Shown here piece by piece: positions 44,841 through 64,000 of a stretch of DNA of 64,000 nucleotides. The position numbers and the translations under genes were made by a program. The stretch is from Bugula neritina (taxonomy: Eukaryota; Animalia; Bryozoa), in NCBI GenBank assembly GCA_964035545.1, contig OZ037772.1, positions 13,018,818 through 13,082,817 of the forward strand, given 5' to 3'. Position 1 is the first letter of the stretch; the number at the start of each line of letters is the position of its first letter. The notes below the pieces were generated by a model that worked only from the letters and a program-made list of their open reading frames with translations, was not told the DNA's origin and made no database searches.

Positions 44841-47450
44841 CATGCAAGAAAGCCTGACGTTTGTACATTTATTACTTCTGAGTTCTCAAATTCCTCTCAG
44901 AGATCGAATTATTAAAAGCTAGTTTTGTGAGGATTCAACAGCAAGTTAGATTCTTCTATATCTGAATTCTGTCCTTAGAGAATGCCTGACATGCACCCCT
45001 CACTGATTCAGTATTAAATACTCATATACATCTTAGCTATAATCTACAGACTGTTGGGGGGGGGGGCTGTGTATAGGCTACAGTCTTTTTTAGATTCAAT
45101 TCTGTGCAAACATGTCCTAAAATTATTTGGGAGTTTTGTGACTGCATGTAAAGTTTTCAGTCAGCTCAAAGTGGGTGGTATTACAAATTCAATACTGATT
45201 ATTGATGAATAGTCAAACCATTTTATTGAAATATTGGGAATAAGAAAATGAAATTACCTAATTTCAGCAGATTGTGCAAACACGCAGCAAAATAATTTTG
45301 ACTACCCATCTTTAAGAAACAAGACTCCTCATTCTTCTGCTTCAAATTCTTCATTTCATACCCTAAAAGCTCTTCACGTAGAGTTCTGCAAAATAAAGTC
45401 ACATTTTCAACTGCTGTAAAAAATAAAAGCATTATTTCAATTGACTCCCGAACATTGCGATTGCTTGCAGTGGTTGCTAAGAAGAGGTGTTTTATTATTA
45501 CCTATTTTACCAACCACTGTGAGGTCATCAGGCTATAAACTCTGGTGATACTGAGGCTATAGCTAATCTAGTAGCGTTCACGGTTTACGTGTTCACTCAT
45601 ACTGCGCAGTCTTGAAAACTTTTAATAGATGCTTAGTAAGTTTGGTGTGACAAATTAATTGTAAAATCATTTTAGATACGGAAGTTTTTAGCTTTGGAAA
45701 CTTTTGCTTTGATTTTTGTTGTAAATTACTCCGTGGTGCTAAATATATGGTATTGTATTCATTTACTGTTGACTTGTAATTACTATTTTATATTCTATTG
45801 TCTTGCTAAAATTACTGTGATAAACTTGATTGCGTTTTAATTTGTCAATTTTTCAACTATATACTTGATGTTAATATATTTATAATTGTTTCAGTGTAAT
45901 ATTTCATTGTACTCTATGATAAAACATATGTGTTATAATTGAAATATACTTGCATGGGTAATATCAGCACTACACTTTGGAACCATTTTATTATACTTGA
46001 AGTCCCTTAGGTACCACTCAAACCTTTTAAGTATACCAAGAAATATTTGCAAACATGTCAATAACATGAAGGACTTTACTTTAGCTTTATCTTTAGTTAT
46101 CAGTGAGCTCTCGCTATGAGTAGATACAGAATTCCAATACAGATTAATTTGTATAGCTCATCATATATACCTATGTACTTTATATATCTAAATAACACCT
46201 ACTTAGGGGAGATAACACCTATTCCAGGAAGGGAAGATAATACTATAAGTCAACAGTTTAAGCTATTTATATGCACTATAAATTAGCATCATATCTTATT
46301 CAGTTTGAATTACAATACAAACACAGTTGGTTTAAGGTCATACTTTTCATTTTCTGGCTCTTTGCCAGGTGCTTTACGTTCTATATGAACAATGTTCCAC
46401 TGATAGCTCGAACAGGTTGAATGTCACAGGAACAAAAAAAATATGAAAAGATAAAGAAACTTATGTTCTCCAATATACTTTTTTATTTTTTTCAAAAGCC
46501 AATTCATGTTTAAGTTATAGCTTGTTGAAAAACATAGTCCCCCTTCCACATTCTTTAGAATAAATGTTTGCATATACATATGAAGCTATATTAACCACAA
46601 CCTGATCTATCTATAATATGCCCATGGTTCGAGTTGGCCCCAGTAACACCTATGACACAGTTATACACCGTATTCGTAGCTGTGAGCTACAATCATATAG
46701 CAAATAGCTCTACTGAGTACTAAATGGAGATGGTACTGATTCAACTTGGTGATTTAATAGACTCATCTTTATTCACTTATAAAGTGCTTGAGAACACTGC
46801 AACTTGTCTATAGCCTGCTTTCCTGTAATTCTCAGAGCCATAGCTTCTGTTCCAAACAATGCTAAACACTACTGTCAACATGTGATAGCAAATCTTAGAA
46901 ATATATTTAATATTTAGAGTTTGTCTCGACATGAAGTTAGTATAACTGGGCAAACATTATTAGGAAAGAAATGCAACTGATATACAATAAAAAGCCTTTT
47001 TAAAAGCTTTACTTTAAATTTTCAAATAACATTTAGCAGAATAATTATTTTTTCAAAACAAGCAATAATAAAAACTTTCACACCATTATTTATTCTTTAA
47101 CAACTTGACTAAACAGAAGTGACCGCGACAGCACAGCGACAGCACTCTTGTACTCAACTATTCTATAGCAATCTATTATGCTTCTAAGTTAGTAGTTGCC
47201 TTCTCATGGATATATAATGGCGTACTCAACTATTCTATAGCGATCTGTTGCTACTATCTACACTAATCGAGGGAATTTTAGTAACTCTGTACTAGAAGAA
47301 CTTGAATACTAAATAACTTGAATAGACTATTATATAGTTCATTGAGTGTTAAATACAATCATCTAGTATGTCACACAGTGACTCGCACATCTTCAATTAG
47401 TTTCTAAGATGAGTCATCTAGTTCAATGACCCTGTGACCTTCTCAGCTGC

Positions 47451-50400
47451 TTACAGTATCTACAACAGAATTGGATATATAAACATAACATAACAGATAA
47501 ATAATATAACATATATAAATAACATAACAGATAAATAATATAACAGATAAATAATATAATAGATAAATAATATAGCAGATGAATAATATAACAGATGAAT
47601 AATATAACAGATAAATAATATAACAGATAAATAATATAATATACAAAGATATAGCTACTTACAGTGCAAGATTTGTCCTTGAGCCCAAGTTTGTCCTCTG
47701 CCCTTCCAATCCACTTCTCCTCAGGCACGGCATCATCCTGCTGCTCGTTCTTCTGCTTCAACTGTTCTGCCAGCTGCTCCATTCTCTTCCTTTCTTCTCT
47801 CATTCTCTCTTCCGCCTGCCTCAACAGTCTCTCGCGAGTTGTTTCTTTCGTCTTGATTTCAGTTTTTAGCATCTCCAATTCATCTTTTTCCTTCCTCTGC
47901 TGCTCCATTTCTTTCATTCTCTGTTCACCTTCCACGGCCTCCTGGCGCTTTTGATTTTCTTTTTCCTTTCGTTCTACTTCTGCCCTTTGCTTCTCTAAAA
48001 GTGCCTGTTGCTTTTCTTTCTCCAACTTCTCCCTCCTCTCCGCCTCTAACTTCTCCCTCCTCTCCACCTCCATCTTCTCTCTCTTCTCAGCCTCCTCTTG
48101 TAGCAGACGTGCTTGCCTTACATTCTCTCTCCTTTCAGCCTCAGCTCGATTTTTCTCCAACAGAGCTTCCTTTTCTTCAAGCTGGCGCTGTTTTCTCCGG
48201 TTCTCCTCCATTAGCACTTCCTTCTCTTTAACTTTCCCCAACTGGCCGCTGACTCCTTTCTTGACAGCTGCTGCCGCTTCATCTGCCAGCGTCTTCTGCT
48301 GGGTTTTCTTCTCCTGTTCCTTTTGCTTTCGTTGCTCAGCTAACTTTTGATACTTAGTTTTTAGTTCCTCCACACTTCTCTGTTGCTGGAGAATTTTCTT
48401 TTCAAACATTTCCTTTTCTCCTTTTAGGTTTGTCGCATCCATTATGAACTTTGTCTTCTCCGTGAGACCGTCTTTCTTCTGCACCAGCAACTCCAGGTAC
48501 TTCCTGCGGGGAGAATAAGGTGTATATTAGTGAGTAGAATAAGGTGTATATTAGTGAGTAGAATAAGGTGTATATTAGTGAATAGAATAAGGTGTATATT
48601 AGTGAGTAGAATAAGGTGTATATTAGTGAGTAGAATAAGGTGTATACTATATTATGCATATACTATTAAACTTACTTTCTTGTAGGCGACTCTTTATACT
48701 TCTGAATGGTTTTCTTGTTGCGGAAATTTTCTACTGTCTCATCCACAATATTTACTAAAACAGCCAACAGTTCTTCTTCCGTCTCAAAGTGTTGGTCATA
48801 CACCTGGAGAAGAGTTGGTAGTGAGTAGTTACTGTTAGTGAGTAGTTACTGTTAGTGAGTAGTTACTGCTAGTGAGTAGTTACTGTTAGTAAGTAGTTAC
48901 TGTTAGTGAGTAGTTACTGTTAGTGAGTAGTTACTGTTAGTGAGTAGTTACTGTTAGTGAGTAGTTACTGCTAGTGAGTAGTTACTGTTAGTGAGTAGTT
49001 ACTGCTAGTGAGTAGTTACTGTTAGTGAGTAGTTACTGCTAGTGAGTAGTTACTGTTAGTGAGTAGTTACTGCTAGTGAGTAGTTACTGTTAGTGAGTAG
49101 TTACTGTTAGTAAGTAGTTACTGTTAGTGAGTAGTTACTGCTAGTGAGTAGTTACTGTTAGTGAGTAGTTACTGCTAGTGAGTAGTTACTGCTAGTGAGT
49201 AGTTACTGTTAGTGAGTAGTTACTGTTAGTGAGTAGTTACTTGACTAAGATTAAAATGAAGACGAGAATACAACCTTGGTCATCATGTTGTCGTAGAATT
49301 CAGTCGACTCAATGAACGCCTGACCGAGCAGCGACTCTTGAAATGCTTCTGAGGCTGTCTGTATCTTGATTCCACCAATGTCTGGGTCTATGATGCGGTC
49401 TCTTAGTGACTGTAAGTATGACAAGCAGGTGAGTGACAAGCAGGTGGTTACAGGTGAGTAGACAAGCAGGTGGCTACAGGTGAGTAGACAAGCAGGTGGT
49501 ACTAGGTGGGTAGAAAAAATTATAAAGCCGTACTCTGAATTTCTTGACCACGTATTTCCCTTTTTGCAGATCTGAAGGTTTGGGACTTTCAATAAAAAGA
49601 CGGTGGAAGAAATCTTTGGCAGCCATTAGATAGTCTTCACCAATATCTGAAGAATGACGGATATGTTATGTTTCTTCTCAACACACAGCACACAGCTTAT
49701 GTTAGTATAATATCTGCTTCCCATAATGCATCAGCAAGATAACTCAGATAATCCCCTGACAATCACTTGTACTGGTTACTCAACACATTTGGTGAACTCC
49801 ACTCACCTACAGAGTTGACCCTAACTTTGGTCTTCCCATCATCTGAAGATCTGGTGATGTTTGGGCCAGGATGGGGCAAGGCATACGTGGTGACTGATTT
49901 AAACGCCCTTTTTATTCCTCGCCCAAACTTCTTGATTACTTCAGCTTTGGCCTCTTCCATCTGGCAATCAGTTAGTGTATCAGTTACTATACCAGTTACT
50001 ATATCAGTTAGTATATCAGTTAGTATATCAGTTAGTATATCAGTTACTATATCAGTTACTATACCAGTTACTATATCAGTTAGTGTATCAGTTAGTATAC
50101 CAGTTACTATATCAGTTAGTATATCAGTTAGTATATCAGTTAGTATATCAGTTACTATATCAGTTAGTATGCCAGTTAGTATATCAGTTAGTATATCAGT
50201 TAGTGTATCAGTTAGTATATCAGTTAGTATATCAGTTAGTATACCAGTTAGTATACCAGTTAGTACATCAGTTACTGTATATCAGTTAGTATACCAGTTA
50301 GTGTATCAGTTACTATACCAGTTACTATATCAGTTAGTATATCAGTTAGTATATCAGTTAATATATCAGTTACTATATCAGTTACTATACCAGTTACTAT

Positions 50401-53400
50401 ATCAGTTAGTGTATCAGTTAGTATACCAGTTAGTATATCAGTTAGTACATCAGTTAGTATATCAGTTAGTATATCAGTTAGTATACCAGTTAGTATATCA
50501 GTTAGTATATCAGTTAGTATACCAGTTAGTATATCAGTTAGTATACCAGTTACTATATCAGTTAGTATATCAGTTAGTATATCAGTTAGTATATCAGTTA
50601 GTATACCAGTTAGTGTATCAGTTAGTATACCAGTTAGTATATCAGTTAGTATATCAGTTACTGTATATACTGATAGAGCTCACAATATCATTGAATTCTT
50701 CCTTCTTCTCTCCGAGTTCATCGTCTCCCTCCCAGTCACGGATGAGAAAGATGAGAGAGTTGAACAGCGCCTTGCTCTCGGGGTCTGCTTCGGCGTAGTC
50801 TGCACACAACTGTCACCAAATATACAGCAACTCTGTTGAGTTTTCCTTCACAATTTGGAGTTGTCTACTCAAAGCTAAGTACGAGACAGTGGGTTTGGTT
50901 TGGTGGAACTAGATGACTAAGAGTTGTGTACTCTGCTAATGCATGCACATCTCCAGAGCTTCTAAGTCTATTATATATTTGAGAGCTTTAGTGTGCAGTA
51001 TAACTTAAGGGATGAGATATTTCAACTACTTCATTCTAGAGAACTTTAGATAATATTTTTAGATATATAAAATAAATAGGTTTGCATTTACATTAACCCA
51101 CAGAAAAATAGGTTTGTATTTACATCTAAGCGCTCCATATCAGTAGCCTGTAGAACCCCTTTAAGGTTGAGAATCTGAATGCTTGCCATTTGGACTCCCA
51201 TGTAGAGGATGAGGTTGTCCAGAGTTGGGCTGCTTAGCCTCGCGTCTCCAGTTCCCTGGCAGTCCATCAGCAGAATGGCTACCTGGAGTATTACATAATA
51301 ACTATACTATATACCTGTAGTATTACATAATAACTACTGTATACCTGGAGTATTACATAATAACTACTATATACCTGTAGTATTACATAATAACTACTGT
51401 ATACCTGGAGTATTACATAATAACTACTATATACCTGTAGTATTACATAATAACTACTGTATACCTGGAGTATTACATAATAACTACTATATACCTGTAG
51501 TATTACATAATAACTACTATATACCTGGAGTATTACATAATAACTACTGTATACCTGGAGTATTACATAATAACTACTATATACCTGGAGTATTACATAA
51601 TAACTACTATATACCTGGAGTATTACATAATAACTACTGTATACCTGGAGTATTACATAATAACTACTATATACCTGTAGTATTACATAATAACTACTAT
51701 ATACCTGGAGTATTACATAATAACTACTATATACCTGTAGTATTACATAATAACTATACTATATACCTGTAGTATTACATAATAACTATACTATATACCT
51801 GGAGTATTACATAATAACTACTATATACCTGGAGTATTACATAATAACTACTATATACCTGGAGTATTACATAATAACTACTATATACCTGTAGTATTAC
51901 ATAATAACTATACTATATACCTGGAGTATTACATAATAACTACTATATACCTGTAGTATTACATAATAACTACTATATACCTGGAGTATTACATAATAAC
52001 TACTATATATCTGGAGTATTACATAATATCTACTGTATATCTATGATATTATCTACACAACTGAACAAACCCCATTAACAATGAACGGATGATCCCAAAG
52101 CCAGATGCCGTGAGTCACAGCTGTTTTACTCTTAGCCCACCTGCCATCTGTGATCTTCATGTTGCTCTCCTCCCACCCTTCGTCTGTCCCCTCCTACAAA
52201 GGGGAGATAAACCCGAAATTTGGTGACTGGGTAATATTTTCTATAAATTTGGTTAGTTTTGGTGGTTGATGAGCAAATAGTAAGAGCTATTGCTGTAAAC
52301 AAACTATGAATAAACAAAGATGACTTTGATTTCTAATGAATATAATGTCTATAGATTTAACCACTGCCCTGCTGCCAAGCATGCTGTCACTATTGCAATG
52401 ATGATGTCACAAAAATATAAACCTAAAGAGCAACTCCTAATTAATACCACTTTGATATAAACTTCATATCATTCCGGCAGCGTAGCGGTATGATACTATT
52501 TACGTCAAGCATGGTTAAGGCCTTAGAAAGATGTGAACTCACAACTTGGGTACAAATCCATTTCCTACACATAATGTGCCTGTATTTGGTAGTATGGGTG
52601 AGCACATGTTTGGGGACTAGGGAGAGAACCTTTACTTAATGATAGTATGTATATATAATTACAACTTTTAGTGTACTGCACACGACATTGATGGTTTTTA
52701 TAAATAACAAAGTGGTAATAGTACTATCAGTACTATAGTAGTACTACTATCAGTACTAGTACTAGTACTAGTACTGATAGTAGTACTACTATCAGCGCTA
52801 CAGTAGTACTACTATCAGTACTAGTACTAGTACTAGTACTGGTACTAATAGTACTAGTACTACCAGTAGCAGTTCTAGTACTAGTACTGCTACTGGTAGT
52901 AATAGTACTATCAGTGCTACTATAGTACTAATACTACTACTAATAGCAGAGTTCTATGACTTACAAAGTGGTAATAGTCAAGGTACGTCTTCATAAGGTT
53001 CAGAATGAAAGACTTTCCAGATCTGAGAACTCCGGTTATGGAGACAATGAAGACGGGCATATCCTGAGCGTTCCCCCTGTCTATCACATTCCTGAACTCT
53101 TTCACCAGGAACTCCGGTGTCCCGGCTTCCACGTCATCTGGGAACTTGATTATAGCCGTTGGCTTGGCGGGAATTATCCAGTCTTTCACAGTTTGCTGAG
53201 AGTAACATACATGTAGTTATACTCACAGTAACACACATGTAGCTATATTCACAGTTTGCTGAGAGTAACATACATGTAGTTATATAATGACACATAATAA
53301 TTATATAATATATATAATGACACATAATAATTATATAACATATATAATGACACATAGTAATTATATAATATATATAATGACACATAATGATTATATAATT

Positions 53401-53448
53401 GTACTCTAAATATAAACTCACTATCAGAGTGGACACGGCTGCTTCCAT
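47451..53448 (-). CDS. Atlastin/GBP-family (GB1/RHD3) large GTPase with coiled coil and C-terminal CaaX, about 681 aa; exons 53448-53422, 53195-52965, 52193-52071, 51282-51124, 50809-50684, 49960-49807, 49646-49534, 49409-49275, 48803-48676, 48503-47663, 47459-47451
   Basis: G1 IVSITGVLRSGKSFILNL, G2 AVTHGIWLW, G3 LLMDCQG, G4 LIFLIRDW, YALPHPG; about 270-aa E/K/R/Q-rich tail; ends KDKSCT|IL*; all junctions GT-AG and in phase. Confidence 0.88.
47488..47642 (-). repeat. 16-nt repeat ATATTATTTATCTGTT in the terminal (CaaX-splitting) intron
   Basis: Direct reading. Confidence 0.85.
48512..48646 (-). repeat. 24-nt repeat TACTCACTAATATACACCTTATTC running into the acceptor
   Basis: About 6 units. 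Confidence 0.9.
48818..49241 (-). repeat. 17-nt repeat AGTAACTACTCACTAAC (about 25 units)
   Basis: Fills intron 49274-48804. Confidence 0.93.
49967..50668 (-). repeat. 12-nt repeat ATACTAACTGAT (about 58 units, variant ATAGTAACTGAT)
   Basis: Fills intron 50683-49961. Confidence 0.95.
51280..52040 (-). repeat. 30/32-nt repeat GTATATAGTAGTTATTATGTAATACTCCAG (about 24 units); last unit is the true acceptor
   Basis: Fills intron 52070-51283. Confidence 0.95.
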
Positions 53449-54815
53449 GCTTAAATGGTCTAAACTATGAACAGAATGATTTTTAAGCGTTTCCCCAAGT
53501 AACTATTGTCAGTGATTCAAGCAATTGCAATTTTAATATCAAAGCCAATTCTCTGGACGTGTGCTGATGGTGCTTACACCTTGTTGCAATCTCTTGAGCT
53601 GTAATAATTTACCATTTCAAGTACAAATGGCACAGGTAATAGTGGCACAGGTAATAATAGTACAAGGAATAGTAGCACAATTGGAAAATTAGATAAAAAT
53701 GGCACACTGATGTTAAATTTGCCGAAACCCCAAACTCAACCCCCCCCCCTCCAAAGCCCCATATTATAAATGTGTCAATTTTTTGATTTGTGCCATTTTT
53801 ACCTAAAATCATAGTGACTCACCTAGGTGAGATCTAAAGCACTAGCTCACAGTTATAGGTACTCACACACGCAGTAACTCACAGTTATAGGTGCTCACAC
53901 ACTGCAGTATAGTTGGATGAATTTAGATAAGACCCAATAGCCTAATATCCAACAGCTGGGTGTGTTCTTCAAAGTCGGGACATCTAACTACCACCCCTAA
54001 CCACGAGACAGAGATTATTTTAAGAGATACAGCTACGCACTAACACCTTGTTTGACTAGCCATCTGTGAAGGGGAATTTTGGCTTCTACTTGAGATTGTC
54101 AGCAAGCCCTATCAGTGTGGTAGATCACTGAGTAAACAATCAGAGGCTAAGACCCAAGCGGGTGGTGATAACAGAATATACCGCATATCTTCAGATCTTA
54201 GCAGCTCATAATTTTATATTATTATCATAATACCATTATATAATATTATGATATACTGTAGAATAATATAATATTATGATAGAATGTATAATAATATAAT
54301 ATTATGATATACTGTATAATAACATAATATTATGATATACTGTATAATAACATAATATTATGATATACTGTATAATAACATAATATTATGATATACAGTA
54401 CAATAACATAACATAATAAACATAATATAGAGTGTCACAAAGAAATATCTGAGTTAAATTCTTGTCGAGCTTCAAAGTCAGCATTTTATGTGATTAATAC
54501 AGAGCCAAAGGTTGACTGGTACAGCTCTACTGTGAGCACCAAGTATAGAGTGGCACAGCTCTACTGTGAGCACCAAGTGTAGAGTGGCACAGCTCTACTG
54601 TGAGCACCAAGTGAAGAGTGGCACAGCTCTACTATTTGCTGATAAGGTAAGAGTTTACAGTGTAGATTGTAGACAAAAACCACCGGCTAGATTATCAGCT
54701 CCTATTGACTTTACAGACGGAGTAAGAGCTGTGATAGTAGAATTACCTGGTGTACTTGCTCAACAGTCCTTAGCACTTGAAAGGTAAGTAGTAGGTAGTG
54801 TAGCATTATAATATA

Positions 54816-55231
54816 TAATAGTAAGTAACACATATATAGGAGTAAGTAACACATATATAATAGTAAGTAACACATATATAATAGTAAGTAACACATATAT
54901 AGGAGTAAGTAACACATATATAATAGTAAGTAACACATATATAATAGTAAGTAACACATATATAGTAGTAAGTAACACATATATAGGAGTAAGTAACACA
55001 TATATAATAGTAAGTAAGTAACACATATATAATAGTAAGTAACACATATATAATAGTAAGTAACACATATATAATAGTAAGTAACACATATATAATAGTA
55101 AGTAAGTAACACATATATAATAGTAAGTAACACATATATAATAGTAAGTAACACATATATAATAGTAAGTAACACATATATAATAGTAAGTAACACATAT
55201 ATAATAGTAAGTAACACATATATAATAGTAA
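54816..55231 (+). repeat. 21-nt repeat GTAAGTAACACATATATAATA (about 19 units)
   Basis: Follows AAG|GTAAGT at 54784, a possible 5'UTR donor of the plus-strand GTPase. Confidence 0.93.
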
Positions 55232-55474
55232 TTCAGAAGTTTATAGTAGTAAGTGTGTTATGCAGGCTTGTGTTATGCTACTTTCTCTAAATTTTCTGTT
55301 GTTAAAATAGAGCCTGCATGAAACCTGTCTACAAGACTCATAGAGCTTTGTCAAGTTTAACACGCTAAGTTGACCTTGACACGCTAAGTTGACCTTGACA
55401 GGCTGCATTGACTTTGACAGCGATATCTTCAGACTAATGTAAAAAGACATCAGGAGCTATAGTGAGGGTGAGAG

Positions 55475-58400
55475 ATGGCCACACTGACCTCTTACCAAGT
55501 GGTAAGTGTTGTAGCTATGCAGTCACATTGACTTCTACTCTGCCTATATCAGAATACTATTGGACAATGTATGATAACACGGTTTGCTATTGGCTGATAC
55601 ATGACATAGTTTGCTACATACTCAGTAACACAGCTTGCTATTGGCTGCTCTATATGTACTATTAGACCAGTGAGTTTCAACAGCACTTCATTGATCCCAA
55701 TGCCAAGCCTGTGGAGATTGTCACATTTCCTGAAGATATCGAGAACGGCGCCCCGACATTCCTACTGGAAAGGTTCCAGAGTATCCTGGAGAAGCAGGGA
55801 GCTAAGAAGTTGCCCGTCTTCATCATATCCATCACCGGGGTGTTCAGATCCGGCAAGTCTTTCCTGCTCAACCTGATGAAGACCTACATTGAGTACTACA
55901 GTACGGTGAGTAGCCCACCCCTCCCGAGTAGTGTATGATACCCAGTCTATACTCTCAGTCTATACTCTCTCAGTCTATAAATCAGCACCACTGCTAGCTA
56001 CTGTTACAAGAGGATTTGATACACTTATTGTATTTGCTTATAAACTGACTGCAGAATACTAGGATAGACATGTCTGTCCTAGTATTCTGCTAGGTGTAGT
56101 AATACATGCTACTTGGTGTACTAATACATACTACTAGGTGTACTAATACATACTACTAGGTGTACTAATACATACTACTAGGTGTACTAATACATGCTAC
56201 TAGGTGTACTAATACATACTACTAGGTGTACTAATACATACTACTTGGTGTACTAATACATGCTACTTGGTGTACTAATACATACTACTAGGTGTACTAA
56301 TACATGCTACTAGGTGTACTAATACATACTACTAGGTGTACTAATACATACTACTAGGTGTACTAATACATACTACTAGGTGTACTAATACATACTACTT
56401 GGTGTACTAATACATACTACTAGGTGTACTAATACATGCTACTTGGTGTACTAATACATACTACTAGGTGTACTAATACATGCTACTAGGTGTACTAATA
56501 CATACTACTAGGTGTAGTAATACATACTACTAGGTGTACTAATACATACTACTAGGTGTAGTAATACATACTACTAGGTGTACTAATACATACTACTAGG
56601 TGTACTAATACATACTACTAGGTGTACTAATACATGCTACTAGGTGTACTAATACATACTACTAGGTGTACTAATACATGCTACTAGGTGTACTAATACA
56701 TACTACTTGGTGTACTAATACATGCTACTTGGTGTACTAATACATACTACTTGGTGTACTAATACATACTACTAGGTGTACTAATACATACTACTAGGTG
56801 TAGTAATACATACTACTAGGTGTAGTAATACATACTACTAGGTGTACTAATACATACTACTAGGTGTAGTAATACATACTACTAGGTGTACTAATACATA
56901 CTACTAGGTGTACTAATACATACTACTAGGTGTACTAATACATACTACTAGGTGTACTAATACATACTACTAGGTGTACTAATACATACTACTTGGTGTA
57001 CTAATACATACTACTTGGTGTACTAATACATACTACTAGGTGTACTAATACATACTACTAGGTGTAGTAATACATACTACTAGGTGTACTAATACATACT
57101 ACTAGGTGTAGTAATACATACTACTAGGTGTACTAATACATACTACTAGGTGTACTAATACATACTACTAGGTGTACTAATACATACTACTAGGTGTACT
57201 AATACATACTACTAGGTGTACTAATACATACTACTTGGTGTACTAATACATACTACTAGGTGTACTAATACATGCTACTAGGTGTACTAATACATACTAC
57301 TAGGTGTAGTAATACATACTGCTAGGTGTACTAATACATACTACTAGGTGTACTAATACATACTACTAGGTGTAGTAATACATACTACTTGGTGTACTAA
57401 TACATGCTACTAGGTGTACTAATACATACTACTTGGTGTACTAATACATACTACTTGGTGTACTAATACATACTACTAGGTGTACTAATACATACTACTT
57501 GGTGTACTAATACATACTACTAGGTGTACTAATACATGCTACTAGGTGTACTAATACATGCTACTTGGTGTACTAATACATACTACTAGGTGTACTAATA
57601 CATACTACTTGGTGTACTAATACATACTACTAGGTGTACTAATACATACTACTAGGTGTACTAATACATACTACTTGGTGTACTAATACATACTACTAGG
57701 TGTACTAATACATGCTACTAGGTGTACTAATACATGCTACTTGGTGTACTAATACATACTACTAGGTGTACTAATACATACTACTTGGTGTACTAATACA
57801 TACTACTAGGTGTACTAATACATGCTACTAGGTGTACTAATACATGCTACTAGGTGTACTAATACATACTACTAGGTGTACTAATACATACTACTTGGTG
57901 TACTAATACATACTACTAGGTGTACTAATACATACTACTTGGTGTACTAATACATACTACTAGGCGTACTAATACATACTACTAGGTGTACTAATACATG
58001 CTACTAGGTGTACTAATACATACTACTAGGTGTACTAATACATGCTACTAGGTGTACTAATACATACTACTTGGTGTACTAATACATACTACTAGGTGTA
58101 CTAATACATACTACTAGGTGTACTAATACATGCCACTAGGTGTACTAATACATACTACTAGGTGTACTAATACATACTACTAGGTGTACTAATACATACT
58201 ACTAGGTGTACTAATACATGCTACTAGGTGTACTAATACATACTACTTGGTGTACTAATACATACTACTAGGTGTACTAATACATACTACTAGGTGTACT
58301 AATACATACTACTAGGTGTACTAATACATACTACTAGGTGTACTAATACATACTACTAGGTGTACTAATACATACTACTAGGTGTACTAATACATACTAC

Positions 58401-61400: not shown

Positions 61401-64000
61401 TGTACTAATACATACTACTAGGTGTACTAATACATACTACTAGGTGTACTAATACATACTACTAGGTGTACTAATACATACTACTAGGTGTACTAATACA
61501 TACTACTAGGTGTACTAATACATACTACTAGGTGTACTAATACATACTACTAGGTGTACTAATACATACTACTAGGTGTACTAATACATACTACTAGGTG
61601 TAGTAATACATACTACTAGGTGTACTAATACATACTACTTGGTGTACTAATACATACTACTTGGTGTACTAATACATACTACTAGGTGTACTAATACATA
61701 CTACTAGGTGTACTAATACATACTACTTGGTGTACTAATACATACTACTTGGTGTACTAATACATACTACTAGGTGTACTAATACATACTACTAGGTGTA
61801 CTAATACATACTACTAGGTGTACTAATACATACTACTTGGTGTACTAATACATACTACTAGGTGTACTAATACATACTACTAGGTGTACTAATACATGCT
61901 ACTAGGTGTACTAATACATGCTACTTGGTGTACTAATACATACTACTAGGTGTACTAATACATGCTACTTGGTGTACTAATACATACTACTAGGTGTACT
62001 AATACATACTACTTGGTGTACTAATACATACTACTAGGTGTACTAATACATACTACTAGGTGTACTAATACATACTACTAGGTGTACTAATACATGCTGC
62101 TAGGTGTACTAATACATACTACTAGGTGTACTAATACATGCTACTAGGTGTACTAATACATACTACTAGGTGTAATAATACATACTACTAGGTGTACTAA
62201 TACATACTACTAGGTGTACTAATACATGCTACTAGGTGTACTAATACATACTACTAGGTGTACTAATACATACTACTAGGTGTACTAATACATACTACTA
62301 GGTGTACTAATACATACTACTAGGTGTACTAATACATACTACTAGGTGTACTAATACATACTACTAGGTGTACTAATACATGCTACTAGGTGTACTAATA
62401 CATACTACTTGGTGTACTAATACATACTACTAGGTGTACTAATACATACTACTAGGTGTACTAATACATACTACTAGGTGTACTAATACATACTACTAGG
62501 TGTACTAATACATACTACTAGGTGTACTAATACATACTACTAGGTGTACTAATACATACTACTAGGTGTACTAATACATACTACTAGGTGTACTAATACA
62601 TACTACTAGGTGTACTAATACATACTACTAGGTGTACTAATACATACTACTAGGTGTACTAATACATACTACTTGGTGTACTAATACATACTACTAGGTG
62701 TACTAATACATACTACTAGGTGTACTAATACATACTACTTGGTGTACTAATACATGCTGCTAGGTGTACTAATACATACTACTAGGTGTACTAATACATA
62801 CTACTAGGTGTACTAATACATACTACTAGGTGTACTAATACATACTACTAGGTGTACTAATACATGCTACTAGGTGTACTAATACATACTACTAGGTGTA
62901 CTAATACATGCTACTAGGTGTACTAATACATGCTACTTGGTGTACTAATACATACTACTAGGTGTACTAATACATACTACTAGGTGTACTAATACATACT
63001 ACTAGGTGTACTAATACATACTACTAGGTGTACTAATACATGCTACTAGGTGTACTAATACATGCTGCTAGGTGTACTAATACATGCTACTAGGTGTACT
63101 AATACATGCTACTTGGTGTACTAATACATACTACTTGGTGTACTAATACATACTACTTGGTGTACTAATACATGCTACTAGGTGTACTAATACATACTAC
63201 TAGGTGTACTAATACATACTACTAGGTGTACTAATACATGCCACTAGGTGTACTAATACATACTACTAGGTGTACTAATACATACTACTAGGTGTACTAA
63301 TACATACTACTAGGTGTACTAATACATGCTACTAGGTGTACTAATACATACTACTAGGTGTACTAATACATACTACTAGGTGTACTAATACATACTACTA
63401 GGTGTACTAATACATACTACTAGGTGTACTAATACATACTACTAGGTGTACTAATACATACTACTAGGTGTACTAATACATACTACTTGGTGTACTAATA
63501 CATACTACTAGGTGTACTAATACATGCTGCTAGGTGTACTAATACATACTGATATCAAGCCATAGAAAGAAATTGGTAATCTTTAGAGGAGTATTAGAGT
63601 TTACAAATAAATCTGCTCATGTTGTTTCAGAATGACACAGATGACGGTTGGGAGAAAAGTTTAGAACAGCCAATAAAGGGTGGAGCTTGGGCTAAGAGTA
63701 AGAGAGCTGTCACGGAGGGGATATGGCTCTGGGACAGTCCGTTCATTATCAATGGGGTGAGTCTACAAGTTATGTCGGGATCAATAAATAGGCAGCAGGA
63801 AAATGTGTTACTTCACTCACATGAATATCTTCAGAAATGGCTAAATTATTGGTAATATTTTGTTGTGTTCCACTGATAGAAGTGAGATTGAACTCTCAGT
63901 TTACCAAATCACATACAATTGAGTGGTTTTATTTTCAGGTAGCGATCTACTTAATGGACTGCCAAGGGTCGGGGGACGCTGTGCGCAGCAGCCCCACATT
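55475..64000 (+). CDS. Second atlastin/GBP-family GTPase, 5' part only; exons 55475-55501, 55666-55905, 63631-63756, 63939-64000 (truncated)
   Basis: IISITGVFRSGKSFLLNL, WAKSKRAVTEGIWLWDSPF, VAIYLMDCQG; intron positions and phases match the minus paralog, including a 9-codon first exon. Confidence 0.88.
56090..63550 (+). repeat. About 7.46-kb 22-nt satellite GGTGTACTAATACATACTACTA (about 340 units) inside intron 55906-63630
   Basis: Direct reading; few recurrent variants. Confidence 0.98.

What the first reader, a model, noticed from the sequence alone, without database searches (positions are those of the whole stretch)
47451..53448. Atlastin-type GTPase with GBP-like architecture: no TM hairpin, long coiled coil, CaaL prenylation motif
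Seen: GxxRxGKS with the arginine finger, DCQG, FLIRDW and LPHPG, then about 270 aa of charged helix and KSCTIL*. Known: DTQG, RDW and LPHPG typify atlastins, which are TM-anchored ER fusogens; GBPs have DTEG and RDF, a helical tail and often CaaX, and coat pathogen membranes; CaaL is a GGTase-I substrate. Inference: a lineage-specific soluble, geranylgeranylated atlastin derivative convergent on GBP design, possibly a cell-autonomous immunity effector. Automated models could miss the 9-nt last coding exon.
Basis: partly seen in the sequence, partly recalled or inferred. Interest (0 to 1): 0.8.

Follow-up and report, generated by a model that had tools for sequence, protein, structure and literature searches.

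The report
Lipid-anchored atlastin-like GTPase of a bryozoan
This bryozoan gene encodes a relative of the ER-fusing GTPase atlastin that has no membrane-spanning anchor and instead carries a very long charged helix and a lipid-attachment (CaaX) signal; it belongs to a family of at least 14 such genes, a design otherwise known from vertebrate immune GBP proteins.

Summary
An 11-exon minus-strand gene (53448-47451, 681 codons) carries GVLRSGKS, DCQG, FLIRDW and LPHPG. A 280-aa last large exon is 51% charged. A 9-nt terminal exon gives KSCTIL*. Spliced contigs from four public runs confirm all eight junctions from e1 to e9. None covers the last junction.

That junction rests on comparative evidence:
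- The head-to-head neighbour has the same split (KSKCM|IM*).
- Other paralogs end CKVM* and CPVL* without an intron.
- A Watersipora relative ends KCTIL*, encoded as one piece with the same last nine bases.

The GTPase head is nearer atlastin than GBP: profile comparison gives E 1.5e-28 against 1.4e-15. It forms its own long-branched bryozoan clade outside canonical atlastins. No TM segment is present. The tail looks more like an ER/K single helix than a coiled coil.

The genome has one canonical atlastin and at least 13 further paralogs with varied C-terminal anchors. No canonical GBP was found on its chromosomes.

Prenylation and an immune role are untested. TM-less atlastin paralogs are already published (BmAtlastin-n). 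The scan had already noted two paralogs of this family on other DNA (s1-442929, s1-447303). Verdict: a real new variant of a known kind, of moderate to high interest.

The parts
53422..53448 (-). First coding exon e0, ATG..ATA (MEAAVSTLI), donor GTGAGT, phase 0
   Evidence: Read from the sequence. The neighbour paralog has the same 27-nt, 9-codon first exon (MATLTSYQV, window 55475-55501), spliced the same way in the B. neritina model P0002. It resembles MGAAESSMA of P0059. No RNA was laid here.
52965..53195 (-). Exon e1: N-terminal strand and P-loop GVLRSGKS with the in-loop arginine
   Evidence: Pfam GBP E 1.7e-4. Acceptor 53195 and donor 52965 are confirmed by spliced contigs. PDB best hit atlastin-3, 1.1e-3.
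52071..52193 (-). Exon e2: atlastin-type insert (GW..W..) and switch I VTHGIW
   Evidence: Junctions confirmed. It aligns to the atlastin-specific W..PL.GF.WRGG..TTGI segment in hhalign. PDB hit RNF112, 0.035.
51124..51282 (-). Exon e3: G3 motif DCQG and switch II
   Evidence: Pfam GBP 1.2e-5. Only atlastin-1/-3 hit in the PDB. Same exon boundaries as the genome's canonical atlastin. Junctions confirmed.
50684..50809 (-). Exon e4: G4 motif FLIRDW
   Evidence: The e3-e4 junction is canonical. The e4-e5 joint is reported 4 nt offset, with the same skipped length of 723.
49807..49960 (-). Exon e5: ALPHPG, ends in phase 1
   Evidence: Junction 49807/49646 confirmed in three runs.
49534..49646 (-). 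Exon e6: start of the helical middle region
   Evidence: Junctions confirmed. Homologous to P0059 residues 252-286.
49275..49409 (-). Exon e7: middle region
   Evidence: Junctions confirmed.
48676..48803 (-). Exon e8: middle region, ends in phase 2
   Evidence: Junctions confirmed.
47663..48503 (-). Exon e9: 280 aa, 51% D/E/K/R, with about 170 aa of nearly uninterrupted ER/K-rich helix; then EEKWIGRAEDKLGLKDKSCT and the donor ACT|GTAAGT
   Evidence: Composition and heptad scan. Acceptor confirmed. 20 synonymous against 11 nonsynonymous differences to the RNA contigs.
47460..47662 (-). Last intron, 203 nt, a 16-nt minisatellite. It holds no AG between position 7 and the terminal TAG. It is open in frame, so retention would add a hydrophobic tail.
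   Evidence: One X2 contig (depth 2.9) runs 27 nt into it.
47451..47459 (-). Terminal 9-nt coding exon ATA CTG TAA (IL*), completing the CaaX box CTIL
   Evidence: It follows the first AG after the donor region. It is the only one of 10 downstream two-codon acceptor options that gives a CaaX. The neighbour has the same split with ATC ATG TGA. Watersipora P0040 ends TGT ACT ATA CTG TAA without an intron. Not covered by RNA contigs.
47089..47450 (-). Probable 3' UTR up to the first AATAAA (starts at 47094)
   Evidence: X2 contigs cover 47250-47449.
55475..55899 (+). Head-to-head neighbour paralog: e0 55475-55501, e1 55702-55899. Its e2 (63637-63756) and e3 (63939 onward) follow after an 8-kb intron, and the gene runs off the window.
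   Evidence: Its end KSKCM|370-nt intron|IM* is at L012 3708-3710 and 4081-4089.

Best explanation
A real, expressed, selectively constrained gene of a bugulid bryozoan. It encodes a 681-aa large GTPase whose head descends from the atlastin side of the GBP/atlastin superfamily. The atlastin TM hairpin and amphipathic tail are absent. In their place is a helical middle region, an ER/K-rich helix of about 170 residues, a short Trp-containing segment and a CaaX box (CTIL).

Inferred mechanism:
- GGTase-I geranylgeranylates the Cys, followed by -TIL removal and methylation, so the protein is tethered to the cytosolic face of a membrane by its C-terminus.
- The long stiff helix holds the GTPase head tens of nanometres from that membrane.
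- GTP binding drives head-to-head dimerisation or oligomerisation, as in atlastins and GBPs. The P-loop arginine, switch I Thr, DxxG and RD motifs are all intact.
- The result would be nucleotide-controlled tethering or coating of membranes rather than fusion.

It is one member of a bryozoan family (at least 14 genes in this genome) that keeps the head and swaps the anchor.

Shown: gene structure for e1-e9, expression, constraint, atlastin-type head, lack of TM, CaaX recurrence. Inferred: use of the last micro-exon, prenylation, dimerisation, tether or coat function.
For: Gene and expression:
- Eight junctions are reproduced by spliced contigs from four runs of four studies.
- Of 39 listed genome-versus-contig differences, 26 are synonymous and 13 nonsynonymous.

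Head:
- Pfam GBP hits e1 and e3.
- PDB hits of e1 and e3 are atlastins.
- The family profile against atlastins gives E 1.5e-28 over 280 columns, including the atlastin-specific insert. Against a true GBP it gives 1.4e-15.
- P0040 against ATL1 gives 1e-14, against RNF112 3e-11, against GBP5 5e-4.
- An AF2 model of relative P0054 (pLDDT 83) best matches the ATL1 cytosolic domain.
- Exon boundaries are shared with the genome's canonical atlastin.

No TM: the highest KD19 value is 1.34, at the P-loop strand.

CaaX:
- The neighbour ends CMIM, split at the same point.
- C9:6.69 Mb ends CKVM* and C5:14.24 Mb ends CPVL*.
- Watersipora ends CTIL and CSIM.
- The last intron is free of AG before its acceptor.

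Family: 15 e1-type loci in the genome, one of them the canonical atlastin. They have the same exon structure. The clade is monophyletic at 100/99.
Against: - No RNA contig spans the 47663->47459 junction, and one low-depth contig continues 27 nt into the intron.
- The runs are only guessed to be RNA, although spliced joins argue for it.
- Prenylation, GTPase activity and dimerisation are inferred from sequence alone.
- The structure model is of a relative with about 40-45% identity per exon, and its alignment is dominated by atlastins.
- In the tree the family sits on a very long stem (2.28), with only one GBP protein as outgroup, so 'derived from atlastin' rests mainly on profile scores, the shared insert and intron positions.
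Confidence: 0.6

Rival explanations
1. The same protein works as a cell-autonomous defence effector, a GBP analogue. It would be recruited by its lipid anchor to pathogen- or symbiont-containing membranes and coat them in a GTP-dependent way.
For: - The family is expanded and clustered (at least 14 loci on C5, C6, C8 and C9), with fast-diverging tails and anchors.
- No canonical GBP (LG + GBP_C) was found on the chromosomes. The only such hits lie on contigs with ciliate-code genes.
- There is a precedent: TM-less BmAtlastin-n restricts BmNPV and microsporidia (PMC4926086). A review asks whether atlastins take over GBP roles in invertebrates (PMC9005921).
Against: - There are no induction, localisation or infection data.
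- The listed differences show purifying, not diversifying, selection (26 synonymous: 13 nonsynonymous).
- The exon-by-exon genome search for GBPs is insensitive.
- Family expansion alone is weak evidence.
Confidence: 0.22
2. The 9-nt exon is not used. The mRNA retains the last intron or ends elsewhere, so the protein has no CaaX. Read-through would add about 75 aa of Tyr/Ile/Leu-rich hydrophobic sequence encoded by the minisatellite.
For: - No contig shows the junction.
- X2 record 6 runs from 47860 to 47636, 27 nt past the donor.
- The frame stays open to 47423.
Against: - That contig has depth 2.9 against 20-44 for the other exons of the same run, which fits pre-mRNA.
- The repeat is open in every frame simply because it lacks AA, AG and GA.
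- The donor is ACT|GTAAGT and the acceptor is the first AG after a T-rich tract.
- The resulting CTIL equals the contiguous Watersipora end. The neighbour keeps the same split with conservative changes.
Confidence: 0.12
3. It is an ordinary member of the GBP family proper, with a divergent GTPase domain.
For: - Pfam files the head under PF02263 'GBP'.
- NCBI names one relative 'guanylate-binding protein 4-like'.
- It has a CaaX end and a long helical tail like GBP1/2/5.
- Foldseek also hits GBP1/2 at 1e-14 to 1e-15.
Against: - PF02263 also covers atlastins.
- No GBP_C (PF02841) is found in any exon or in the full-length relatives.
- Profile and sequence scores favour atlastin by about 10-13 orders of magnitude.
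- The atlastin-specific insert is present.
- In the tree the clade is separate from Strigamia GBP.
Confidence: 0.04
4. It is a decaying duplicate with no function.
For: It lies in a family with many copies. One paralog (C8:11.79 Mb) has lost the P-loop arginine (GAQNSGKT).
Against: The 681 codons are open across 11 exons. Transcripts are spliced in four runs. Synonymous differences are in excess. All the catalytic motifs are intact.
Confidence: 0.02

Closest known systems
Atlastins (human ATL1-3, Drosophila atlastin), ER-fusing dynamin-like GTPases
   Same: - P-loop with the in-cis arginine (GxxRxGKSF).
- The insert W..P..G..WR between G1 and switch I.
- RDW and LPHPG.
- Shared intron positions with the canonical atlastin of the same genome.
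- Best sequence, profile and fold matches.
   Different: - No two-TM hairpin and no C-terminal amphipathic helix.
- DCQG instead of DTQG.
- A long ER/K helix and a CaaX box instead.
- It lies outside the tight bilaterian atlastin clade, on a long branch.
- Fusion is unlikely without the TM segments (from established knowledge of atlastin).
Guanylate-binding proteins GBP1/2/5 (interferon-induced, prenylated)
   Same: The overall plan is shared: large GTPase head, helical stalk, and a C-terminal CaaX. CTIL compares with GBP2 CNIL and GBP5 CVLL, which are geranylgeranylated (PMC9005921). The family is multigenic.
   Different: No GBP_C domain is detected. The head is much closer to atlastin. The tail is ER/K-rich rather than the alpha12/13 GED.
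BmAtlastin-n of Bombyx mori (PMC4926086)
   Same: It is an atlastin-family paralog with a GTPase head and a 'coiled-coil' region but no TM segments. It is cytoplasmic, and silkworm also has several such paralogs.
   Different: It was not retrieved by any search here, so it is not a close relative. It has 770 aa and a C-terminal domain of unknown function. No CaaX is reported in the passages I read. Its antiviral role was tested; this gene's role was not.
Macrostomum lignano 'GB1/RHD3-type G domain' proteins (P0010, P0183, P0186, P0063)
   Same: They are atlastin-like heads without TM and with charged helical tails. Some models end in CaaX (CVLM, CSIQ).
   Different: They form a separate clade nearer canonical atlastins (96/97). 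They show weak GBP_C hits. They are uncharacterised database models, several of them tandem fusions.
RNF112 / neurolastin (PDB 9jju-9jjx)
   Same: It is an atlastin-related GTPase head at similar sequence distance (P0040 E 2.9e-11; e2 best hit).
   Different: From my own knowledge, RNF112 has an N-terminal RING finger and TM segments. No RING is present in e0 or e1 here.

Membership tests
GBP/atlastin superfamily (Pfam PF02263) | Large GTPase domain matching the PF02263 profile | tested here: met
   e1 scores 21.3 bits and e3 25.1 bits against a cut-off of 21.1. Full-length relatives P0054 and P0040 score 71-81 bits.
Atlastin | Atlastin-type head: P-loop Arg, G1-G2 insert, RDW, LPHPG; closer to atlastin than to GBP profiles | tested here: met
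   Motifs. hhalign gives 1.5e-28 (atlastin) against 1.4e-15 (GBP). The PDB hits of e1 and e3 are atlastins. G3 is DCQG, not DTQG.
Atlastin | Three-helix-bundle middle domain | tested here: inconclusive
   hhalign stops in the first helix after the head. The AF2 model of relative P0054 aligns over about 415-425 columns to ATL1 1-447, but the alignment used for the model was rich in atlastins.
Atlastin | Two adjacent TM segments and a C-terminal amphipathic helix | tested here: not met
   The highest Kyte-Doolittle 19-residue mean in any exon is 1.34 (at the P-loop strand), and 0.21 in e9. Segments spanning exon borders were not scanned, because exons were not joined.
Atlastin | Nests within the canonical metazoan atlastin clade | tested here: not met
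   Bryozoan relatives form their own clade (100/99), outside canonical atlastins (89/96) and outside the Macrostomum group. The window gene itself was placed only by exon-level identity to those relatives.
GBP (guanylate-binding proteins) | C-terminal helical domain PF02841 (GBP_C) | tested here: not met
   No hit in e6-e9 or in P0054, P0040 or P0058. The Strigamia GBP control scores 406 bits.
GBP (guanylate-binding proteins) | GBP-type head (DTEG, RDF; nearest to GBP sequences) | tested here: not met
   The gene has DCQG and RDW. GBP5 gives E 5e-4 against ATL1 1e-14. Some paralogs do carry DCEG or RDF.
CaaX prenylation substrates (GGTase-I class) | Cys at -4, aliphatic a2, X = Leu at the true C-terminus | tested here: inconclusive
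   CTIL* results if the 9-nt exon is used. The splice is supported by paralogs and by Watersipora but not by RNA.
CaaX prenylation substrates (GGTase-I class) | Actual lipid modification | not testable with these tools
   Needs labelling or mass spectrometry.

The most novel reading that the evidence does not exclude
Cheilostome bryozoans lack canonical GBPs. From atlastin they built a GBP-like arsenal of their own: a family of large GTPases that keeps one catalytic head on a long ER/K spacer and exchanges the membrane anchor. The anchors include geranylgeranyl or farnesyl CaaX, a polybasic CaaX, a Gly/Ala-rich hydrophobic hairpin and an amphipathic end, plus N-myristoylation-like starts in some members. 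Different members would thereby be addressed to different membranes for cell-autonomous defence or for control of the bryostatin-producing symbiont.
Probability: 0.15. Interest if true: 0.8.

Novelty: new variant of a known kind. Interest (0 to 1): 0.6.

Why it matters
Atlastins are thought of as TM-anchored ER fusogens and GBPs as prenylated immune coats. The question of whether atlastin relatives take over GBP roles in invertebrates without GBPs is open in the literature (PMC9005921).

This family offers a natural experiment. An atlastin-type head has been moved onto a lipid anchor, with at least three other anchor types among its paralogs. That makes two things directly testable:
- what an atlastin head does when it cannot fuse membranes;
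- whether the GBP design arose twice.

It also shows that automated models in bryozoans truncate these genes and miss the lipid-anchor signal.

Tried and rejected
- All work on the window gene was exon by exon, and full-length analyses used database relatives.
- The search for homologous proteins cannot see full-length kin of single exons. The exhaustive search with e1 returned mostly exon-sized fragments.
- The profile word search scored only the 8000 candidates sharing most words, probably coiled-coil words. Its bryozoan-only result is therefore weak evidence of absence elsewhere.
- The mixed atlastin/GBP profile search listed only atlastins, so no vertebrate GBP, Sey1 or RNF112 sequences were available for the tree. 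The GBP outgroup is one Strigamia protein (three units). With three clades the tree cannot by itself say which side the family came from.
- The first AF2 run with 6 sequences failed in the head (pLDDT 56). Only the 37-sequence run was used.
- Foldseek does not separate atlastin from GBP well (E 1e-17 against 1e-15).
- Read laying gave no joint at the last intron, and my stretch ended at 53249, so e0 is unseen. The run X2 contig with about 502 further upstream bases could not be read.
- Literature searches for atlastin with bryozoa, 'atlastin-like' with prenylation, and LOC432253 found nothing relevant.
- A spliced-junction DNA pattern search was considered and left out, because it would be a joined model.
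- No complex-prediction job was sent, because dimerisation is inferred from the family and would not have been tested on the window's own protein.
Full report
**1. What is in the sequence**

The window is animal DNA with 35% GC. Introns are filled with minisatellites.

On the minus strand I built an 11-exon model:
- e0 53448-53422
- e1 53195-52965
- e2 52193-52071
- e3 51282-51124
- e4 50809-50684
- e5 49960-49807
- e6 49646-49534
- e7 49409-49275
- e8 48803-48676
- e9 48503-47663
- e10 47459-47451

It totals 2046 nt, or 681 codons plus the stop.
- GVLRSGKS in e1
- VTHGIW in e2
- DCQG in e3
- LIFLIRDW in e4
- ALPHPG in e5

e9 ends ...EEKWIGRAEDKLGLKDKSCT before ACT|GTAAGT. After a 203-nt intron, TTGTAG|ATA CTG TAA gives KSCTIL*.

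Pfam's GBP model (PF02263, which also covers atlastins) hits e1 and e3 above its cut-off. No other family hits any exon.

**2. Is the gene real and expressed**

The look-up of sequencing runs gave runs that are only guessed to be RNA. Laid on 47250-53249, contigs from four runs of four studies contain joins that remove the introns between e1 and e9.
- Seven joins are listed with GT..AG ends.
- The e4-e5 join is reported 4 nt offset with non-canonical ends. The skipped length is identical (723), so the frame is unchanged.
- Joins that remove exactly the predicted introns are what spliced mRNA gives, so I read them as evidence that the gene is transcribed and spliced. The tool did not check whether the joined forms also occur in DNA runs.

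The contigs differ from the genome by 2-8%. Of the 39 differences the tool listed, 26 are synonymous and 13 nonsynonymous. That excess indicates purifying selection, and it holds in the charged tail too (20:11).

Two ends are not covered.
- No contig shows the e9-e10 join. One low-depth contig (2.9 against 20-44 elsewhere in that run) continues 27 nt into the last intron.
- e0 lay outside the laid stretch. One 763-nt contig carries about 502 further bases upstream of the e1 acceptor that I could not read. These are probably 5' UTR exons. There is an acceptor-like TTTAG 11 nt before the ATG (read from the sequence).

**3. The terminal micro-exon and the first exon**

Evidence for e10 is comparative and structural.
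- The last intron has no AG between its 7th base and the terminal TAG, and it is 57% T.
- Of 10 downstream AG sites that would add two residues and a stop within 1.2 kb, only this one makes a CaaX box.
- The head-to-head neighbour paralog ends ...AKTKHKSKCM|GTTAGT, then a 370-nt intron, then TTGTAG|ATC ATG TGA. The CaaX box is therefore split at the same point. The changes are a synonymous Ile codon, Leu->Met and TAA->TGA.
- The paralog at C9:6.69 Mb ends PSKCKVM* and the one at C5:14.24 Mb ends SGFCPVL*, each on one exon. C5:16.74 Mb may end CIIS*.
- In another genus, Watersipora subatra P0040 ends AKCTIL* and P0054 ends KCCSIM*. P0040's end is contiguous DNA, TGT ACT ATA CTG TAA, with the same last nine bases as e10.

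Evidence for e0:
- The neighbour has a first coding exon of the same length and phase (MATLTSYQV, 55475-55501, donor GTAAGT).
- That exon is spliced to its e1 exactly as in the Bugula neritina model P0002.
- Our MEAAVSTLI resembles MGAAESSMA of P0059.

**4. Organism and family**

The named relatives are all cheilostome bryozoans: Watersipora subatra and Bugula neritina. B. neritina proteins are 77-95% identical to paralogs in this genome. The window therefore comes from a close relative or sibling lineage of B. neritina. The genome is 216 Mb.

e1 has 15 matches in the genome.
- One (C9:6.56 Mb) is the canonical atlastin, 50-71% identical per exon to a snail atlastin.
- The others share this gene's exon structure.
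- They fall into three sequence groups:
  - C8/C9, with DCQG
  - C5, with DCEG, RNY and PHPG
  - C6, with DIQG and RDF

Their C-termini differ:
- CaaX boxes.
- Gly/Ala-rich hydrophobic hairpins (C5:17.52 and C5:12.01 Mb).
- An amphipathic ...LFKRFF end (C8:12.74 Mb).

Some relatives start MGxxxS, which is like an N-myristoylation signal. This gene does not.

The public B. neritina models of these genes are fragments or truncated.

**5. Atlastin or GBP**

On the window's own exons:
- e1's best PDB hits, after spurious matches to designed PPR repeat proteins, are atlastin-3 at 1.1e-3 against GBP5 at 0.17.
- e3 hits only atlastin-1/-3.
- e2 hits RNF112.

On full-length relatives, P0040 gives:
- ATL1 1.1e-14
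- fly atlastin 3.9e-13
- ATL3 1.4e-11
- RNF112 2.9e-11
- GBP5 4.6e-4
- no Sey1 hit

Profile against profile:
- Family against 16 atlastins gives E 1.5e-28 over 280 columns. This includes the segment W..P..G..WR..T.GI between G1 and switch I, which GBPs lack.
- Family against a true GBP (Strigamia, GBP+GBP_C, ending CVIL) gives E 1.4e-15 over 206 columns, with a gap there.

e3's borders map to the same residues as an exon of the genome's canonical atlastin.

In a G-domain tree (34 rows, LG+C20):
- The bryozoan proteins form one clade (100/99) on a stem of 2.28 substitutions per site.
- That clade lies outside canonical atlastins (89/96), outside a Macrostomum soluble atlastin-like clade (96/97) and apart from the GBP units.
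- The tool warns of long-branch attraction, and with three clades the tree cannot be polarised.

Overall the head is atlastin-like and is not a member of the canonical atlastin clade. It does not sit in a GBP clade. No GBP_C is detected in the exons or in the relatives.

An AF2 model of P0054 built with a 37-row alignment (pLDDT 83, pTM 0.71) best matches the ATL1 cytosolic domain (E 4e-17, about 415 columns). GBP1/2 and RNF112 lie only two to three orders of magnitude behind. The fold search alone does not discriminate.

**6. The tail**

No exon has a TM-like stretch (KD19 maximum 1.34).

e9 is 51% D/E/K/R and has a single Pro.
- Between residues ~89 and ~258 there is one Gly.
- Mean hydrophobic occupancy of heptad a/d positions is 0.39, and 0.25 through the centre.
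- There are 50 i/i+4 opposite-charge pairs.

That profile fits an ER/K single alpha-helix better than a canonical coiled coil. If it is a single helix, about 170 residues would span roughly 25 nm (inference).

A Trp-containing segment (EEKWIG / ENWIDE / EEKWSE / PTWAEE) precedes the anchor in several paralogs.

**7. Mechanism**

The committed reading, with the steps marked as inferred, is given under Best explanation. In brief: the protein would be geranylgeranylated at CTIL (X = Leu directs GGTase-I, from established knowledge). It would be anchored by its C-terminus, with the head held far from the membrane. GTP-driven head dimerisation would give tethering or coat assembly, not fusion.

An immune role is possible but untested.
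- For it: family expansion, anchor diversification, and no canonical GBP on the chromosomes. The only GBP+GBP_C hits lie on small AT-rich contigs whose gene is open only under the ciliate code. There is also the BmAtlastin-n precedent (PMC4926086) and the question raised in PMC9005921.
- Against it: no functional data, and purifying selection in the differences seen.

**8. Novelty**

TM-less atlastin paralogs are published for silkworm. Prenylated large GTPases are known as GBPs. Uncharacterised Macrostomum models combine an atlastin-like head with CaaX.

I found no paper describing an atlastin-type head with a prenylation signal, or this bryozoan family.

The scan itself had already noted two paralogs. 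s1-442929 is the CKVM gene and s1-447303 is the neighbour. I saw both ends independently.

I rate this a new variant of a known kind.

Noticed in passing
G000 contig C208:24200-26930 (L037 701-3430); also C191:8981-10018: A 910-codon GBP+GBP_C-type ORF is open only under the ciliate nuclear code (56 TAA, 17 TAG and 0 TGA in frame; GC 27%). It sits on a 32-kb contig, which is probably ciliate contaminant or epibiont DNA in the assembly. These contigs are the only canonical GBP-type hits in the genome.
   Followed up: partly
window 47485-53399, introns of the gene: Eight of the ten introns are largely filled by different tandem arrays (units of 6, 12, 16, 17, 24, 26, 30 and 30 nt, up to 58 copies). 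Several units contain splice-site-like words, such as CCAG|GTA on the gene strand in intron 2 and CAGGTGAGT on the opposite strand in intron 6.
   Followed up: partly
G000 C5:17.50-17.52 Mb (L023+L034) and C5:11.99-12.01 Mb (L025+L035): Paralogs of the family end in two Gly/Ala-rich hydrophobic stretches separated by Pro (for example ...GVAIGLAVGAFAAAVGAFVAVPYVLAAGAAVAGVSAVTGLLTFLFGK*) instead of a CaaX box. This looks like a hairpin or tail anchor.
   Followed up: partly
P0054, P0058, P0059 (relatives); window 53422-53448: Several relatives begin MGSEES / MGSGAS / MGAAES, which looks like an N-myristoylation signal. P0054 would carry both that and CCSIM. The window gene begins MEAAVSTLI, with Glu in place of Gly2.
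   Followed up: no
G000 C8:11.79 Mb paralog (L015): The P-loop reads GAQNSGKT, without the arginine finger, and G3 is DCKG. This may be a catalytically altered member.
   Followed up: no
window 53196-55474: The gene and its closest paralog are arranged head to head, with about 2 kb between their start codons. That suggests a shared bidirectional promoter region. The neighbour's first intron after e1 is about 7.7 kb.
   Followed up: no
window 47729-48065: A contig of run X1 differs from the genome in the ER/K region by an 18-letter replacement and a compensating +1/-1 indel pair (47971/47978). This suggests length and sequence polymorphism in the charged helix.
   Followed up: no
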